Assembly (NCBI GenBank): GCA_965603825.1
Contig: CBFDEM010000009.1
Span: 434,001-498,000, forward strand
DNA from: Blepharisma stoltei ATCC 30299
Lineage: Eukaryota > Protista > Ciliophora
Direction of reading: 5' to 3'
DNA: 64,000 bases
Position 1 is the first letter of the stretch; every line of letters starts with the position of its first letter. Positions 168-28,488 of the stretch are shown one piece after another. The translations under genes were made by a program, and so were the position numbers. The notes under the pieces are model-generated. The model searched no databases, was not told the DNA's origin, and saw only the letters and a program-made list of their open reading frames with translations.

Positions 168-3100
168 TTAAAGTTTGGTATATTTTTTAATTTTAGATAA
201 AGCAACGTTTCTGCCTGTAAAATACTGATATTGATAATAAGCTTGATATACAAACATTGTGAGGGCACTTATTCTTAATGAGCCAGCAATTGTAGCTTGT
301 CTTGATATGTAGGTTTCTGGAGGAAAATAGGCAGCTTCTAAAATAACTGTGGCTGGATTTAGCCAGGGGAGGTCAACTTCTGCGATTCCTGGCAGCGTAC
401 TTATGATTAGCTCAGCGCCACTTGCCAAATTTAAATTTGTAGTTTTATTAGGCCAGTTTATGCCTTGTAGCCTTGCTTCTGATCTATTCCATATCCATAT
501 TTCTCTAACTTTCAGCTTCCTTAATGCATATAATGCTGCTTTGCAAGTCCCTCCAGCTCCTAAAATCACAGCTTTCTCAAATTTTCTACCCAGCTCGACA
601 ATTGGACAATAAATTCCAAGCCAATCAGTATTATCCCCTATCAGTTTTCCATTATGCTTCATTAGCGTATTAACAGCTCCTAATTCTTTTGCATCATCAG
701 TCAAAAAATCTAAATACTGCATTATTTCTTCTTTAAATGGAATAGTGACTGAGCCTCCTAAGCACTCTCTGCTTTTTATCATATGAATAATTGGCTCTAA
801 TGCCTGGGTTTCCATAACTGAGTAATTATAAGGAATTTTTTTTTCTTCAAAAATCGAATTAAATAGAAAAGGGCTTGGCGATTTTTTTACATCATTTCCA
901 ATTACGTAAAATTTAAATAGACTAGGAGAAATATTAAGCGAAAATTGAAAATTTTGGATTTCTTCAAATGTAAGCTGACCTTCTGCAAGTTTTTCGGATA
1001 ATGATACATAATTGGTAGAGGCGTTTTGGACTCTGGTGATGATATTTTCTTTTCCCATTGTAAAATGGATTGTTCTTTGGAAGCCTGGGGAGGGGAGTTT
1101 TTCAAAGCTTGGGGAGATGAATTTGAGGATGTCTGGTTTGGTTTGGGTCATCATATAGTGGATTTCTTTTAAGTTTTCTGTATTATGGCTATGATAAGAA
1201 AGGATTATTCGAGGGGATATGCATTTTTGTAGGAATTCATTATAATTGTGTTTTCAATCTATAGTTGGGGCGAATTCTACGTCAATAAAGTCTGGGGACC
1301 ATGATATAATTTTATGAAGAATTTTCCAATAGTCGTTTCCATTATATTTTCCACCTTGCTGGGCTGTCCTTAAGGTTAGGATAATTTGGAGAGAGTCTGA
1401 TATTTCTCTGATGCAGCTTAATAGCTGTAAAGCTTCTTTTAAGCTAGATAAACAGTCAATGCGTATCTCATAGCCTGCTATATTGCTATTATTTCTGATA
1501 TATTCAGAAAGCTTACCATTGCTAAAGCTTGATATGCAGCCAAAGTAGCTAAAATCATTAGGAAGTGGGGCTTTTTCTTCTAAAATTCTTTTGGTGAATG
1601 TTAAAAATGACCCAAAAACCTCGTCTATGTCCCTAAAAAAATAATAGAATTTAAAGTCATGGACTTGCTTGTATAATGGTTTCCTAAATGCATAAGTTTC
1701 TTCTATATCTCCTGAAATTCTATTTAGATTTTCGTCGTTTTCTATATTTTCAGCGATATTGCTGATGCTTGATTTCATTCATATAACAGGATAAAAAGCT
1801 TTTAAAAGGGTTAAAGATTTAGGATTCTCAATAATCCCACCTCCAGTAGAAATGATGACTCTTTCTTTTCTGATGATTTTACTTAAAGTGGCAAATTCTA
1901 GCTCTCTGAATGCTAGAATTCCATGATTATAAATCCAGTCCCTTAGGCTTTCAACTTTCAAATCATTTGCAATAATTGTATCAATATCAAGGAATTCCCA
2001 TCCAGTTTCTTCTGCGTATTTTCACGCTATAGATGATTTTCCAATTCCTCTCATCCCAATTAAAACAAGACTTTTTGGCTTTTTCCTTTTCTTTTGTGTA
2101 CTTTTATACTCAATTCCACATTCTCTTAGTATTTTCCAGAACTCAGGGAAAGTTTTATTTACAACATTTTTTCTTTTTATCACTATTCCTCCTTTTATCA
2201 CAGTTGACAGCACCCCAAAAGCCATGGCAATTCTATGGTCATCATAAGTCTCAATTTCATAATTCCCAAACAATAAATCAGCTGAATTTCCATATATTTT
2301 AATCCCATCTTCCAGCTCTTCTGAATAAACCCCTACCTTTTGAAGCCCAGCTATGACTGCTTTAATCCTATTGCATTCTTTTACCCTCTGATTAGCAATT
2401 CCAGTAATTATACTGACTCCTTCTGTGCAAGCCATTATGATAGCTGCAGTAATAAAGGAATCTGTGCATCTATTCATATTCACAGTGACTGGTTTTAGGT
2501 CATTAGGAGTTACTACAATACTGTTGTTATAGCACCTTATCGTAGCCCCCATTGCTTCAATCACGTTTAAAAATTCTAATTCTCCTTGGACTGAATTTAA
2601 ATTTATTCGTGAAATTGTGATAGGCTTTTTATGTAGAACAGATAAAGCAATAAAATATGATAGTGAGCAGGCATCAGGCTCGACGATGAATTCCCCTGGA
2701 CTTTTATACCCAGTTGGGTATATTTTGTACTCTCTATTACTTATTTTTTCAACTTGTGCTCCAAAAATATTCATCACTTTAATAGTCATTTCTATATAAG
2801 AAGCTGAAACTGGCTCTTCGTTTTCGTCTAAATTAGTCAAAATTAGAGTAGTCTCACTTCTAAACAGTGGAGCAGCAATTAAAATTGCTGATACAAATTG
2901 AGAGCTGATTTTACTTTTTAATTCAATTATACCACCATTAAAGCCTCCTCCTTTAACCCTTATAGGGAAATGGTTTTGGTTTTCTATAAACTCTACTCTA
3001 TTTTCAGCATTATTTAAAGCTTCGCTTAAATCAGAAATAGGCCGCTCATTCATCCTAGAAGAGCCTTTAATAACAGTGTCATTTTCTAATAATAAACAAA

Positions 3101-4427
3101 CTGCTGTCAAAAATCTGGCTGCAGTGCCAGCGTTTCCTATATAAATTTCTTTTTCTTGGGGATTATTTTTAGGGATTTTGCCTGTGATTATTCATCCATC
3201 AGCTGTTTTTATATGATCACCTATGCCTAAAGTTTGTAAAGATTTCATCATAACCTTAGTATCGTCGGCTTCTAATGAATTTTTTATTATAGTGGTTCCC
3301 TCTGCTAATGAAGAAATCAATAAGACTCTGTTTGTAATTGATTTAGACCCAGAAACTTCAAGTGAAGCTGAAAAATCAGGAATTCCTTTAGGCCTTATGT
3401 CATCTTCAAGTATACATTTTATTAATTTTGCATCACATTTAAGGGCTTCTGTAGGAATTTTTCCGATTTCTGTAGGGACTAAAATTGGAATTTCTTTTCC
3501 TAGCTTTTTTTTATCTAAGTTCATTTTCATCAGCAGTTTATCTGTATTCATCTTTGGAATTTCTATAGGTAATTCATACTGTTTTAAAATTTCTTTAATT
3601 TCATCAATCTCAATTTCAGTTTTTCCCATCATAAAAGCAGCCTCAATCTCTTTAATTATCCCTACACTGACACAAAATCCATGATTCCAGAACCCATCTA
3701 GTTCTGCTTCTATAGCATGTCCAATTGTATGACCAAAGTTTAAAACTTGTCTTAAGCTCTTATCTAATTCATCTTGAATTACAATGTCAACTTTATGCTG
3801 AATTGACGTACTGATTACTTTTAGTAATAGCTGGGAGTCATTTTTGAGAGAATTTATGGTAGCTGATTTAAGTAGACTGTAAAGATCATGGTCTTTTAGG
3901 ATGCTCATTTTAATTATCTCACTAAATCCAGCTGCCCACATCTCATGTGGCAAGGTGTTTAAAAAGGCAATGTCTATATAAACCGCTCTGGGACGATAAA
4001 TGCGGCCAATTGAATTTTTAGCAAAAGGCGTGTCGACTGCTGTTTTGCCACCGACTGAAGAATCAACCATGGCTAAAAGGGATGTAGGAATTTGGATAAA
4101 ATCAATCCCTCGCATATATGTTGAAGCTAAGAACCCAACTATGTCTCCTACAACTCCTCCGCCAAGGGCAATAAGAGTGCTATTTTTGGTGCAATTTTTT
4201 TGGAATAAAAAGTCTTCAATCTCTGCTTTTGTCTCTCTTGATTTGTGGATTTCTCCGGATTGGATGATGTAGCATGGGCAGTTTGATGAATTAATTCATT
4301 CCTTGTAATAATGGTAAATATTTGAGTCTGTAATAATGAATAATTCTTGATTCTGGTCTCTTAGCTGATTTAAATCGAGATAGCTTATCCCAAGATGAAT
4401 CTTGTAAGATTGACAAGAAATATCCAT
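168..4427 (-). CDS. ARO1: Pentafunctional AROM polypeptide (DHQ synthase, EPSP synthase, shikimate kinase, type I DHQase, shikimate dehydrogenase), ~1419 aa, intronless
   Basis: Five track ORFs lie in one frame and are joined by in-frame TGA (4296, 3192, 2022, 1779, 1254). Motifs: GGGVVGD/PTSLLAMVDSSVGGKT; GSKSITNR/GNAGTAARFL/QRVKECNR/DDHRIAM; GMRGIGKS; EIRID/LRTAQQGG; SVTIPFK/AVNT/NTDWLG/GAGG. ATG at 4427, TAA at 168. Confidence 0.96.
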
Positions 4428-4829
4428 ATTTTTATGCTGATCATACAAGATTTTCAACACATCTTTAAATCTCTAACGCCACATAATATTATTGCAAATG
4501 CATCAATTTTAATGCAAACGCAGCATTTCTTAAGGTTCTTTTAACTTATTTTTGACTTTAGTGTAGAAAATCTTAGATCTTAAAGCTCATCATTGCGAGC
4601 AATAGAAGTTAAGGAGGCAGATTTAATTAAGAATAGAATAGATCGATAGATTGCGAATAGTTATACGAGTTATGACTTTTTAATCGTACCAAAACACAAT
4701 AAGTGATCATTTAAGCTATTCCAAGAAATTCTAAATTTCTTTCTGTTAAATTGAATTCTCACGAGTTTTCGAATCGATTTAAGACTTAGTTATAGAAAGC
4801 TTTTGAATTATTAAAGTTAAATCAATAAG

Positions 4830-5752
4830 GGGCTGGCTATAATATAATTGCGCCCAACAGCCGTGGAGCCTGCTTCAAATTTACTCTCCAGGTTTAGTCT
4901 GCTGCATCTAGCTCCTTGAAAATCTGCACATGACGCAAATAGTGCGAGTATTTGCGTCATATGAGGATGACATCCTATTAATTGATAGGACTTACCCTCA
5001 TTTATGCAAAATAGCTGCACTAGTGCAGCTCTCCATCAATGCTCCCACTTCAGAAACTTCCAAAACTTGTGCTTTTTTGCTTAGGAGACACATGCTACCA
5101 ACGAGCTGAATTGGATCATATGATGATCCAAGATTATGGAAAATACTAAAATGGCTATTCATTACTTTTTCTCTGAAAAGATATAAGTTAGTTACATCAG
5201 CATGCATATTATAGGAAGGACTACAGCAGATTATTACTCAAGATCATGTTGCATACTTGATGCATCAAGAGTGATGCTTGTCAAGTGGAATACTATAATT
5301 ATTAATGCTTATTGTTTGAAGCCAAACAATTATTAGCAGTATCTTACCGTAGATGGCGGAGGCTAGCACCTTTAAGGTGCCTGATAAGTAAATTGGAAGG
5401 ATAGTTATCTTAGAGTTGAACATCATTAGTTATTTTTTTGTGATCAATATCAGATATAATCCGATGCTGAAGCGCCCTATGGTGGTAAGAAAAGATAATC
5501 CAGCTCATCAAGAATGGAGTAATTCTGCTTATTCAGCAGCTAGAAGATGAAGGAAGTCGTTTCTCTAATGGTGCATGCAATTCCAGATACTACTAAGCAA
5601 ATAATAAGCACAGCTGCAACAGGTCTTATGTATCTGCTCTCCTGTGTTATTATTGCTTATAATTCCTCATGGAGCTCCAAGATGGCTGAGCCTATTTAAC
5701 TAGAGCTCAGTGAAAAAAATCAATGGCTAGAATTCGTTAAGAATTCTAGACA
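4830..5752 (+). ncRNA. Candidate large structured non-coding RNA or structured leader of unknown family
   Basis: At least 11 stem-loops plus a long-range helix. G-U wobbles favour the + strand. No convincing ORF, and visibly more GC-rich than other intergenic DNA here. Confidence 0.5.
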
Positions 5753-5798
5753 TTTTATTTATTAAATATTGAATTATTACGCTACGCAATAATAAATA

Positions 5799-6185
5799 AT
5801 GACTAAGGGTAAAAAGATAAACCACGGTAGGTGGACTGATTCTGAGCACCAAAGATACGAAGAAGCTTTAAAAATGGGTCTTAGCTGGAAAAAGCTAGCG
5901 AAAGTTGTTGCCAGTAGAACGATTCAACAATGCAGATCCCATCATCAAAAGATGAAAATAAATCCAACTAGCAACCGAATTGCTAAAATAGGCATCACTA
6001 TGTAAGATTCACTTAGGATTGATGCATGTACTCAATATGAAATCCCAATGGCAGAGCATATATTTCGCGCTTCCGAACTTACTTTAAATAACGTCGAAAG
6101 GTTGTTTAAATCATTTGGATATCTTAGTGAAGAAGGTTTTGAGGCAACCATGTACCTAAGTGATGCTTTACCTAAAGGCATTTAA
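5799..6185 (+). CDS. Small single-repeat Myb/SANT (SHAQK-like) transcription factor; 15-nt intron 6002-6016
   Basis: GRWTDSEH...W..LA..V.SRT.QQCRSHHQK. Removing intron GTAAGATTCACTTAG eliminates the stop and extends the ORF to TAA 6185. Confidence 0.9.
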
Positions 6186-6222
6186 CTTAAAATAACTAAA
6201 AAAATATTTTAACAATATCGGC

Positions 6223-6580
6223 TTATTTCACACAAAATTCCGGTAAGGCTTCAGTATAATACACTCCTGACTCATAAGATACAGATACATCGGTTGACGG
6301 AGAAGAGACCTCATATTTTGGCTCATCTGGCCTTACATACTCCCAGGATAACGAATCCAACTGAGACTCATACTGAGTGCTTTTATCTTTCCTGAAATAA
6401 ATCTTACATTTTTGATGGTAATTTGCGGACCTTCATTTTTTGGTGATGCGATCGGCATTGAGTTTCTGATCGAGTACCAACTCTTCGCGCGACCTCTTTC
6501 CAAGAAAGGCCTTCTTTTACAGCTTCTTCGTACGTTTTATGCTCTTCATCTGACCATTTGCCAGCTGCAATTGCTTTCAT
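6223..6580 (-). CDS. Second small Myb/SANT paralog (113 aa), missed by the ORF track; 16-nt intron 6392-6407
   Basis: MKAIAAGKWSDEEHKTYEEAVKEGLSWKEVARRVGTRSETQCRSHHQK. The intron sits at the same AT|G position as in the paralog, and both genes share TQYE downstream. Confidence 0.9.
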
Positions 6581-7550
6581 TATCTAAATATTTATTTCAA
6601 ATTGAAGAGAAGTAAATGGCTTAATTTGAAGATCGACATTTAAATTATAATAAAAATTTCGTGAATTAAAAAAAAATTTAGACCATTCATTTTTATTAAA
6701 ACAGCAATATTCGAAGATGAGAACCTTCAGCATGAATTTAGCATAAAATTAAGTAGATTCATAGACAAATGATCTTCTTCTTCAATTAAGGATTTTGTGA
6801 AGCTAAAATTTAGTCTATAAATTATAAATGATCAAACAATAACTTGCGAAAATTTCGAAATAATACTTAGAAGGAATTTTTTCTGGACAGGATAGGAAGT
6901 CTAATTATTAAGATCGATTACCATAATTAAATAGTTTAAATTGATTCATTTGAAGTTTATGAGATTCACAAAACCAAAGTTGATCAACACTGACATAGAA
7001 ATTTTATATTCAATATACTCTTAGTCATATGTTTAATAAACCTCAATGTTTAAAATTGAAACAAAAATGATAAAATTATCATTTTAGATGCCACTTTTAA
7101 AAATAATCATAATTTCTTATCAAAATGTCAACAATAGTCAAATCATTAATATGACTCTTATGCAGACTATTTATAAATAATTACAAAGCCATCTATTTTT
7201 AGTTCATAATTTTAATACCCAAGTTAATTCTTAAACAGACTCTAAAGACTTTTATAATAATTTTATAAATTTTCTAAATAAAAAAATATTAATATTTTCT
7301 GATTTCTGAACCAATTATGAATAAAAGGAAAACAATTTTCAGCTTTTATGAAGAATAAGATGAAACTTTATATGTATTATTATTCTTTAAAAGGTTTAAA
7401 AGGATAAAAAAAGCATTCAAAATTTTTAACAAAAATCATTTTAATAATTATAAAATTATTTGCTGCTAATCTATTTGATTTTATACATAAATAGGCTTGA
7501 TATTTAAATGACTATATTTAGGCAAAAGACTTATAATTATCGAAGAAATA

Positions 7551-27124: not shown

Positions 27125-28488
27125 AGTAAGAAAATTGTAAATAAAAGTAATCTTGTCAGTAAATAAAAAAAAATCGCCAGAAACCATATTCATTAGCAAT
27201 TAAAGCTGTCAGAAGCTGAATTTAATTCACAATTGATATTTTTGAGCTAATATATTGGAAAATTAGCAGACACAATTAAAATATTTTTGATTTTTAAAGA
27301 GAGAAGAATATAACTGTATTGCTCATTAAAATTTTGATATTTTTCTTATGAAGGCATCTCAACTACTAAAAAAGTAAATGAATAAGTATAAAGGAATCCT
27401 TATATTAGGCAATTTTTTAGTAAATTTCGAAATCAATTAAAAAGTCACATATTTTCTTCTTAATCGGGATCATTATCTTGGTTTTATCCATTAAACAAAA
27501 AGTAAACTTTGAAAAGGAGAAGCTTTTTAATATCATTCGAGGGAATTCTATTTAGATCTTTATTACTCTCTGCAACGCTGCTTTAAAAGCAAAAAAATTT
27601 TCTTTAAGAGGCGATCTGCTGTGGGATTTAGAGTTGCTTTTATTATTTTTGAATTAACTAAATCTTTACGATATTTTTCAGAATTTAAACCATAAATTTA
27701 ATCTTATTCACGTGAATGGCATTATCACATAAATGATCTTTTTAAATCTAAATTTCCATGATGACTATAGCCATAAAGTATTGAGAATCTCTATTTGAGC
27801 TTTTCCATATCGCAGGCTCTGCTACTTTGCTTATACTTGCCAAGTTTTTTAAATTTCATATTCAATAGTAGTCAATTTCTTGAATTGAATTATTAATTTA
27901 AATAATGCATTTATGGAAATTCAATTAAAATCACACTTCAATGAAAATTCCTTATAAGAGTAATAAGTACTTAAAACATTTGAATAATCAATACTTATTT
28001 TACTCTTTTAACAAATCTTATAAAAATACACTTTAAATATAAGAAGAAAATGCAAAGATTAGGATTTAACCCCAATATGGAAAGTAATCAATAGATCATT
28101 ATTTTTGTAGCTCAACCTTCACCATTTTTAATTCTAATATTTATATTTTACAATTACAATTTGGATAATCCACTATATAGCTCTAAATTAGCTGCGATAT
28201 TCTCAGTTCATTCAAAAAATCTTACTTTTCCTAATTCATAATTTTTTTAAACTCCAATTTCAATATAAATCTTAATTAACTGCAGTATTTTTTAACAATC
28301 CTACTAATCTATAATTCCAAAAGATAAAAGCTCGTTCTCTTCAATTTTATTCAATCAAAGAGATCTTCTTAGTTTTAAAATTAGCTGGACAATTTACGGG
28401 ACATTTTACTTAATAAGCAAATTTTGTAACGAATATTCTTAAATTTTATTGACTCTCAATTTAATGAGGAGTAATAATAATTATCATA

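What the first reader, a model, noticed from the sequence alone, without database searches (positions are those of the whole stretch)
4830..5752. ~900-nt hairpin-dense non-coding region: candidate unknown structured RNA
Seen stems: 4930-4941/4949-4960 (12 bp perfect); 4961-4966/4996-5001 enclosing 4973-4979/4984-4990; an 18-nt palindrome at 5013-5030; 5111-5119/5123-5131; 5256-5269, extended by 5251-54/5274-77; 5311-5318/5323-5330; 5366-5380; a long-range helix 5342-5348/5484-5490; a long imperfect stem 5594-5613/5642-5659; 5686-5691/5705-5710; and 5727-5735/5741-5749 followed by ACA-TTTT. Several mismatches are G-U on the + strand, which suggests selection on RNA. An Sm-site-like ATTTTTTTG is at 5432-5440 and a box-C-like ATGATGA at 5120. 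I noticed no other spacer here like it, and ciliate UTRs are normally very short. Inference: a novel Pol II ncRNA, a snoRNA cluster, or a regulatory leader of the Myb gene starting at 5799.
Basis: partly seen in the sequence, partly recalled or inferred. Interest (0 to 1): 0.8.

Follow-up and report, generated by a model that had tools for sequence, protein, structure and literature searches.

The report
Folded non-coding RNA beside Myb gene
In the ciliate Blepharisma, an undescribed, strongly folded RNA of about 970 bases with a poly(A) tail is made from the strand opposite to the one first proposed, back to back with a Myb gene; one relative keeps a diverged copy and another lacks it, so it is probably an accessory long non-coding RNA and not a core RNA machine.

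Summary
The hairpins are real: 8 perfect stems against 1.9 in shuffles and at most 7 in 264 genomic tiles. The region is transcribed, but on the MINUS strand. One RNA-seq contig spans 4790-5755 unspliced with a non-templated poly(A) at 4790, head-to-head with Myb (5799). The minus strand also folds better (z -6.5 vs -3.2). No Rfam match, telomere template, snRNA-type promoter, coding signal or paralogue. RNase P and MRP lie elsewhere. A public 71-aa gene call here is a singleton starting at the tenth AUG. One close relative lacks the whole unit at the syntenic site, rejoining at an 11-bp direct repeat that brackets it. Another relative expresses fragments at about 77% identity, close to the neutral rate, and one visible hairpin is broken; covariation could not be tested. 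Best reading (0.5): lineage-restricted, structured, divergent Pol II lncRNA, most likely a non-essential substrate of the dsRNA/small-RNA machinery. Main rival: transcribed relic of an inserted or retained germline segment. The scan had not noted this element on other DNA; it has unrelated structured-RNA candidates elsewhere in this genome.

The parts
4790..5755 (-). Unspliced polyadenylated transcript, at least 966 nt; true 5' end between 5755 and about 5785
   Evidence: RNA run X8 record 12, no differences, no gaps, 10 loose T before 4790; word shares 0.67-0.74 in four RNA runs exceed the 0.52 the flanking genes alone could give
4790..4790 (-). Poly(A) addition site; the genomic sequence beyond it is not A-rich, so internal priming is unlikely
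   Evidence: a single contig
5722..5754 (-). 5' hairpin (4+9 bp) holding the first AUG (8-codon ORF)
   Evidence: segment z -4.2
5686..5710 (-). Second hairpin
5594..5659 (-). Longest stem-loop, about 24 bp with bulges
   Evidence: z -2.8; 3' part has a 27/30 match in organism D
5249..5381 (-). Cluster of short hairpins (5262-5277, 5311-5330, 5366-5380)
   Evidence: 5262-5277 has two uncompensated changes in organism D
5139..5248 (.). 110-nt, 30% GC segment between two 8/9-identical 9-mers, absent from organism D's transcript
5038..5163 (-). Multibranch domain enclosing hairpin 5111-5131; its outer helices use the segment absent in D
   Evidence: z -2.0
4896..5034 (-). Best-defined domain: three-way junction with a 12-bp hairpin, a two-part hairpin and a closing helix; the 18-nt palindrome 5013-5030 can pair locally or with 4901-4912
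   Evidence: (z -6.4 minus, -4.7 plus)
4803..4813 (+). Left copy of an exact 11-bp direct repeat
5769..5779 (+). Right copy of the 11-bp repeat; organism B's contig rejoins the window exactly at 5769
5756..5798 (.). Short AT-rich (15% GC) gap, inferred bidirectional promoter shared with Myb
   Evidence: promoter activity inferred
4992..5207 (-). Publicly predicted 71-aa ORF (P0121), the tail of a 144-codon ORF from 5426; probably not a real gene
5799..6185 (+). Neighbour: single-repeat Myb gene with a 15-nt intron 6002-6016
168..4427 (-). Neighbour: pentafunctional AROM gene (UGA read as Trp), starting about 365 nt past the RNA's 3' end

Best explanation
A lineage-restricted, structured long non-coding RNA. 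SHOWN: a unit of at least 966 nt is transcribed away from the Myb gene, is not spliced, is polyadenylated at 4790, folds far better than chance on that strand, and has no codon signal. INFERRED: RNA polymerase II starts it in the gap of at most 48 nt shared with Myb; a 5' hairpin and four short upstream ORFs keep the one longer ORF from being translated efficiently; the excess of intact stems is kept by selection on the RNA fold while the sequence drifts. MOST LIKELY ACTION (inferred, untested): its hairpins are bound by dsRNA-binding, Dicer or RdRP machinery, so it works as a non-essential source of about 22-nt small RNAs or as a scaffold co-expressed with Myb, in the manner of the hairpin lncRNA loci of Tetrahymena. 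It is dispensable, since one close relative lacks it.
For: Transcript and poly(A). Four RNA runs of one study hold it. Structure excess and minus-strand preference. No coding signal: (score -46, shuffles -47 +/- 10, true genes median +47, true genes mutated 30% median -27). No protein relative. A homologous transcript exists in organism D (a loose end matches 5249-5278 at 24/30, next best place in the window 19/30). No snRNA-type USE and internal runs of 5-7 U on both strands argue against Pol III. Precedents: promoter NATs (PMC11754650) and hairpin lncRNA small-RNA loci (PMC5340916) in Tetrahymena.
Against: No covariation shown. Visible identity to D is 77% (169/220) against about 82% at AROM third positions, so no sequence constraint is evident. 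Hairpin 5262-5277 is broken by two uncompensated changes in D, although an overlapping hairpin 5250-5264 is kept. Four of five visible bases of the 5484-5490 arm differ in D. D lacks 5139-5248, which removes two predicted helices. B lacks the unit. No stem reaches the >30 bp of Tetrahymena TASL hairpins. No small-RNA data were seen. Strand rests on one contig's 10-nt tail plus folding asymmetry.
Confidence: 0.5

Rival explanations
1. Transcribed relic without an RNA function: a palindrome-rich segment that was inserted, or a germline (IES or MITE-derived) segment that stopped being excised. It sits between 11-bp direct repeats, is read by the Myb promoter's backward activity, and ends in the AT-rich flank just past its end. 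The hairpins are DNA-level leftovers.
For: Exact 11-bp repeats bracket the unit (5 of 1000 shuffles, a post hoc test); B rejoins at 5769; near-neutral divergence; mostly perfect Watson-Crick stems that fold on both strands; the inner 110-nt piece matches a main IES length peak and has near-direct repeats (PMC9942856); IESs here are often bounded by direct repeats and some are palindromic (PMC9942856).
Against: Single copy by BLAST, pattern and two covariance models; no terminal inverted repeats and not a global palindrome; minus-strand folding advantage; an expressed homologue persists in D at about 9% coding distance, and neutral drift should have eroded perfect stems; B has 60 letters at the junction where a clean deletion predicts 68.
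Confidence: 0.25
2. An mRNA for a small orphan protein (71 aa from 5207, or 144 aa from 5426) with a long structured leader that controls its translation.
For: Public annotation holds the 71-aa protein; poly(A) and strand fit; a 145-codon stop-free frame exists; one language-model search gave pentraxin-like clusters at 0.94-0.95.
Against: Fifth and tenth AUG of the transcript; negative codon scores; singleton; model pTM 0.24 and pLDDT 0.49, and the pentraxin score falls to chance level (0.81) for the annotated protein; the two library hits are sums over repeats, best single domain 4.5 and 9.6 bits; the 110 nt missing in D remove the 71-aa start and shift the longer frame.
Confidence: 0.1
3. 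A cis-acting upstream transcript that tunes AROM by transcription toward its promoter; the RNA itself is secondary.
For: Same strand as AROM and directly upstream of it.
Against: It ends about 365 nt before the AROM start and no contig covers 4418-4789; it does not explain the folding; relatives B and C have AROM without it.
Confidence: 0.07
4. Host of a small nucleolar RNA on the minus strand (box C-like UGAUGA at 5510, CUGA at 5453), or, a plus-strand snRNA/snoRNA-like RNA depleted from poly(A) libraries.
For: The 10 bases around the minus-strand box C are kept in D's loose end; C-to-D distance about 60 nt. Poly(A) libraries would hide a non-polyadenylated plus-strand RNA.
Against: No Rfam hit; antisense matches to SSU, 5.8S, the 5' part of LSU, U2 and U6 no longer than in shuffles (shuffles run for rDNA only); no USE on either strand; the plus strand folds less well; absent from B.
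Confidence: 0.08

Closest known systems
Tetrahymena promoter NATs (575 non-coding transcripts from shared bidirectional promoters; PMC11754650)
   Same: Non-coding transcript running away from a protein gene across a very short shared gap, in a ciliate macronucleus.
   Different: Those are a positional class; the passages read report no conserved fold. This RNA is strongly folded and has a homologue in another species.
Tetrahymena TASL / phased-cluster lncRNAs feeding Twi8p and Twi2p (PMC5340916, PMC8694037)
   Same: Long non-coding macronuclear transcript with predicted hairpins.
   Different: TASLs have a hairpin of >30 bp, lack nearby genes, mostly lack ORFs >30 aa and are essential; this RNA has many short stems, abuts Myb, holds a 144-codon ORF and is absent in a relative. 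No sequence homology was tested.
Blepharisma IESs and palindromic MITIES (PMC9942856)
   Same: Direct-repeat-bounded segment absent from a relative's somatic DNA; inner 110-nt piece at an IES length peak.
   Different: Fully present in this somatic assembly, single copy, no terminal inverted repeats, expressed and polyadenylated.
Heterotrich telomerase RNA (PMC8287931)
   Same: Structured RNA without an Rfam match.
   Different: That RNA is short, USE-driven and carries the CCCTAACA template; none of these holds here.

Membership tests
Any Rfam 15 family | Covariance-model match at gathering score | tested here: not met
   no hit; best E 0.32
Telomerase RNA (heterotrich) | Template: permutation of CCCTAACA plus at least one base | tested here: not met
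   no match of 7 or more bases on either strand
Telomerase RNA / snRNA-type genes | USE GTCCC(A/T)TAA about 57-64 nt upstream | tested here: not met
   U6, two U2 and RNase P score 17-20; best site near the candidate's 5' end -0.7, best anywhere 6.3. The MRP gene also lacked a clear match.
RNase P / MRP RNA | Family model match, and no other genomic copy filling the role | tested here: not met
   both lie on other contigs
Sm-class snRNA | Sm site RA(U)4-6GR on the transcribed strand | tested here: not met
Box C/D snoRNA | RUGAUGA and CUGA boxes on the transcribed strand | tested here: inconclusive
   UGAUGA at 5510 lacks the leading purine; CUGA at 5453
Box C/D snoRNA | 10-21 nt guide to rRNA or snRNA next to box D | tested here: inconclusive
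   nothing above shuffles for SSU, 5.8S, 5' LSU; the rest of LSU could not be fetched
Box H/ACA RNA | ACA three bases from the 3' end | tested here: not met
Tetrahymena TASL-type lncRNA | Hairpin of more than 30 bp | tested here: not met
   longest about 24 bp with bulges; longest perfect stem 12 bp
Tetrahymena TASL-type lncRNA | No transcribed gene nearby | tested here: not met
   Myb transcript within 49 nt
Tetrahymena TASL-type lncRNA | Source of Piwi-bound small RNAs | not testable with these tools
   no small-RNA reads available
Promoter-divergent lncRNA (promoter NAT) | Transcribed opposite to a coding gene from a short shared gap | tested here: met
   contigs 4790-5755 (minus, poly(A)) and 5804-6512
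Promoter-divergent lncRNA (promoter NAT) | Longer than 200 nt and without coding capacity | tested here: met
   translation itself not measured
Promoter-divergent lncRNA (promoter NAT) | Mapped start site in the shared promoter | not testable with these tools
   contigs cannot show a start site
MITE / MITIES | Many copies and terminal inverted repeats | tested here: not met
   germline-limited DNA was not searchable
IES (retained) | TA-containing terminal direct repeat and absence from a somatic genome | tested here: inconclusive
   repeat present and B lacks the unit; B's 60 junction letters and germline not seen
Conserved structured RNA | Compensatory base changes across species | tested here: inconclusive
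   only 90 letters of D visible; one hairpin broken, an overlapping one kept

The most novel reading that the evidence does not exclude
The founding member of an undescribed class of heterotrich structured, polyadenylated RNAs with a conserved multi-domain fold and its own protein partners, carried as a direct-repeat-bounded cassette that genome editing keeps in the somatic nucleus of some species and removes in others.
Probability: 0.12. Interest if true: 0.8.

Novelty: new member of a known kind. Interest (0 to 1): 0.5.

Why it matters
I found no description of a structured lncRNA in heterotrich ciliates in the papers searched, and this locus carries a doubtful 71-aa protein call in public annotation. 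It gives a concrete target in a genome with an existing developmental mRNA and small-RNA time course, and a natural presence/absence contrast among close relatives. If the fold proves conserved, it is a new ciliate RNA family; if B's loss is an excision, it shows a whole transcription unit switching between somatic and germline-limited states. Interest is held to the middle because no function, covariation or essentiality is shown.

Tried and rejected
Rfam at gathering and E-value thresholds: nothing. tRNA/tmRNA: none. Telomerase RNA: no template, no USE (21, 55), and a short heterotrich candidate is already published (PMC8287931). RNase P/MRP: a P4-like pairing seen by eye was dropped when both RNAs were found elsewhere. 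SECIS-like and hammerhead-like motifs: partial patterns only, dropped (53 and inspection). A USE-like CCCTTA inside Myb codons 2-4: scores at background. Native pseudogene on either strand: no signal even allowing frameshifts; a foreign gene with other codon use would escape this test. Pentraxin lead: not held by Pfam, PDB, phmmer or the second atlas search. Paralogues: BLAST, pattern, protein piece and two single-sequence covariance models found only the locus (8, 42, 61, 69, 73; candidate lists were capped). Viral, phage, plasmid and metagenome searches: nothing. Syntenic loci through neighbours: Myb exon 1 found no candidates; AROM gave one distant UGA=Trp contig whose 670 nt upstream hold no homologue, but the contig ends there; the metagenome scan gave only distant AROMs. 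Two folding scripts timed out. Proteins containing UGA-Trp were searched only as stop-free pieces by reference; the whole 144-codon ORF and the spliced Myb were not searched as joined sequences.

Full report
Setting. The long minus-strand ORF to the left opens only if UGA is read as Trp, the assembly is 41.5 Mb in 64 contigs, and the introns seen are 15-16 nt. This fits the Blepharisma stoltei somatic genome (41 Mb, UGA = Trp, short UTRs; bioRxiv 10.1101/2021.12.14.471607); the species is inferred. The finding lies between AROM (168-4427, minus) and a Myb gene (5799-6185, plus).

Observation. Every stem and motif listed is there. The region has 8 perfect hairpins of at least 6 bp, against 1.9 +/- 1.4 in 300 shuffles and at most 7 in 264 genomic tiles. 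Folding z-scores are -3.6 (plus) and -5.0 (minus) for the whole region, and -3.2 and -6.5 for local folding. In fixed 120-nt tiles the minus strand of 4890-5810 is the best-folded 900-nt stretch computed in the window (running mean -2.1, background -0.08 +/- 0.42), and minus beats plus in 8 of 10 tiles. The claimed plus-strand G-U excess is absent.

Transcription. Run X8 is RNA: both Myb introns are spliced out and the spacers are uncovered. One contig covers 4790-5755 without gaps or differences and carries ten non-templated T before 4790, which is a poly(A) tail on the minus strand. The genome beyond that site is not A-rich. Three more RNA runs of the same study hold too many words to lack the region. 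So the RNA is at least 966 nt, unspliced, and runs away from Myb, whose contig starts at 5804 (5786 in organism C). This rests on contigs: the start site, the level and a possible non-polyadenylated plus-strand RNA cannot be seen.

Not a known RNA. No Rfam family matches. RNase P and MRP are on other contigs. There is no telomere template. U6, both U2 genes and RNase P share an upstream element GTCCC(A/T)TAA at -57 to -64; the candidate has none on either strand. Antisense matches to SSU, 5.8S and the 5' part of LSU are no longer than in shuffles, and matches to U2 and U6 are at most 10 nt. The rest of LSU was not available.

Not convincingly a protein gene. All six frames score below zero for codon use. 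A frameshift-tolerant model scores the minus strand -46, like its shuffles (-47 +/- 10), while true genes score a median of +47, and -27 after 30% mutation. Public databases do hold a 71-aa prediction from the AUG at 5207 (P0121). It is a singleton, starts at the tenth AUG and has a poor model. A pentraxin-like lead from one language-model search was not upheld. The two hits in the full library are sums over repeats. UGA-containing ORFs were searched only as stop-free pieces, and the spliced Myb only by its first exon; joined sequences were left out.

Copy number and relatives. The unit is single-copy by BLAST, pattern and two covariance models, and nothing similar was found in viral, phage, plasmid or metagenome collections. 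In organism B (DNA, about 94% identical in AROM) one 19.9-kb contig runs from AROM to Myb but skips 4533-4677 and 4735-5768, with 60 other letters in the second gap; no other B contig matched the RNA beyond one 21-nt piece. Organism C (RNA, close to B) shows AROM and Myb but not this RNA; a hole alone proves nothing there. Organism D (RNA, 91% in AROM) has two short contigs matching 5099-5138, 5516-5575 and 5647-5676, with loose ends homologous to 5069-5098 and 5249-5278, so D lacks 5139-5248. The visible identity, 169/220 = 77%, is no higher than the roughly 82% estimated for AROM third positions. Hairpin 5262-5277 has two uncompensated changes in D, while an overlapping hairpin 5250-5264 is kept with loop changes and one extra pair. 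Covariation is therefore untested, and the little evidence is mixed. The tree is unrooted, so gain and loss cannot be ordered.

Boundaries. An exact 11-bp direct repeat lies at 4803-4813 and 5769-5779, 966 bp apart, and B rejoins the window at 5769. Shuffles of the two end regions gave such a repeat 5 times in 1000 (post hoc), and a third copy lies at 27885. A clean deletion between the repeats predicts 68 junction letters; 60 were reported and not shown. The 110-nt inner piece is AT-rich, has near-direct repeats and matches a main IES length peak (PMC9942856). Both features raise the relic reading.

How it most likely works. Shown: divergent, unspliced, polyadenylated, folded, without coding signal, dispensable in a relative. 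Inferred: Pol II from the shared AT-rich gap; little translation because of the 5' hairpin and four short upstream ORFs; stems kept by selection on the fold; recognition by dsRNA-binding or small-RNA machinery, as for Tetrahymena hairpin lncRNA loci (PMC5340916). I give this 0.5; relic of an inserted or retained segment 0.25; small orphan protein mRNA 0.10; snoRNA host or hidden plus-strand RNA 0.08; cis control of AROM 0.07.

Comparison and verdict. By position it meets the testable criteria of a promoter-divergent lncRNA, a class described in Tetrahymena (PMC11754650). It is not a TASL (no hairpin over 30 bp, not isolated), though it may work like one. It is not a MITE by copy number or ends. 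Novelty: new member of a known kind, with an unusually strong fold. Interest 0.5. The most novel reading not excluded is a new heterotrich structured-RNA class on an editable cassette (probability 0.12, interest 0.8). Earlier scan notes list other structured candidates and fossil IES-like inserts in this genome; they are unchecked leads, not support.

Noticed in passing
window 4533-4677: A second segment (145 nt, 30% GC) is absent from organism B's contig, replaced by 5 letters.
   Followed up: no
window 5799-6583: Two short single-repeat Myb genes (54% identical in the domain) face each other; their transcripts overlap at the 3' ends and assemble as one contig in two species. Convergent overlap could make dsRNA.
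   Followed up: partly
window 5804-5809 and 6209: Organisms B and C lack 6 nt (two codons) at the Myb N-terminus; RNA run X8 has 8 extra letters after 6209, probably a strain allele.
   Followed up: no
window 4790-5755: Run X8 differs from the assembly at 3 of 918 AROM bases but at none of 966 bases of the RNA; this may be strain-specific expression or chance.
   Followed up: no
window 168-4427: An intronless pentafunctional AROM gene in a ciliate; its best public relatives outside the genus are only about 40% identical. A distant UGA=Trp orthologue is on L008.
   Followed up: partly
L002, L005, L006, L007 upstream regions: The snRNA-type upstream element of this genome is GTCCC(A/T)TAA at -57 to -64; the MRP gene (L003) lacks a clear copy.
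   Followed up: partly
G000:C64:362119-362280: The closest Myb paralogue (67% identical); its upstream region could hold a diverged sister RNA but could not be fetched.
   Followed up: no
window 5013-5030 and 5256-5269: Two self-complementary palindromes (18 and 14 nt) could allow alternative folds or RNA dimers.
   Followed up: no
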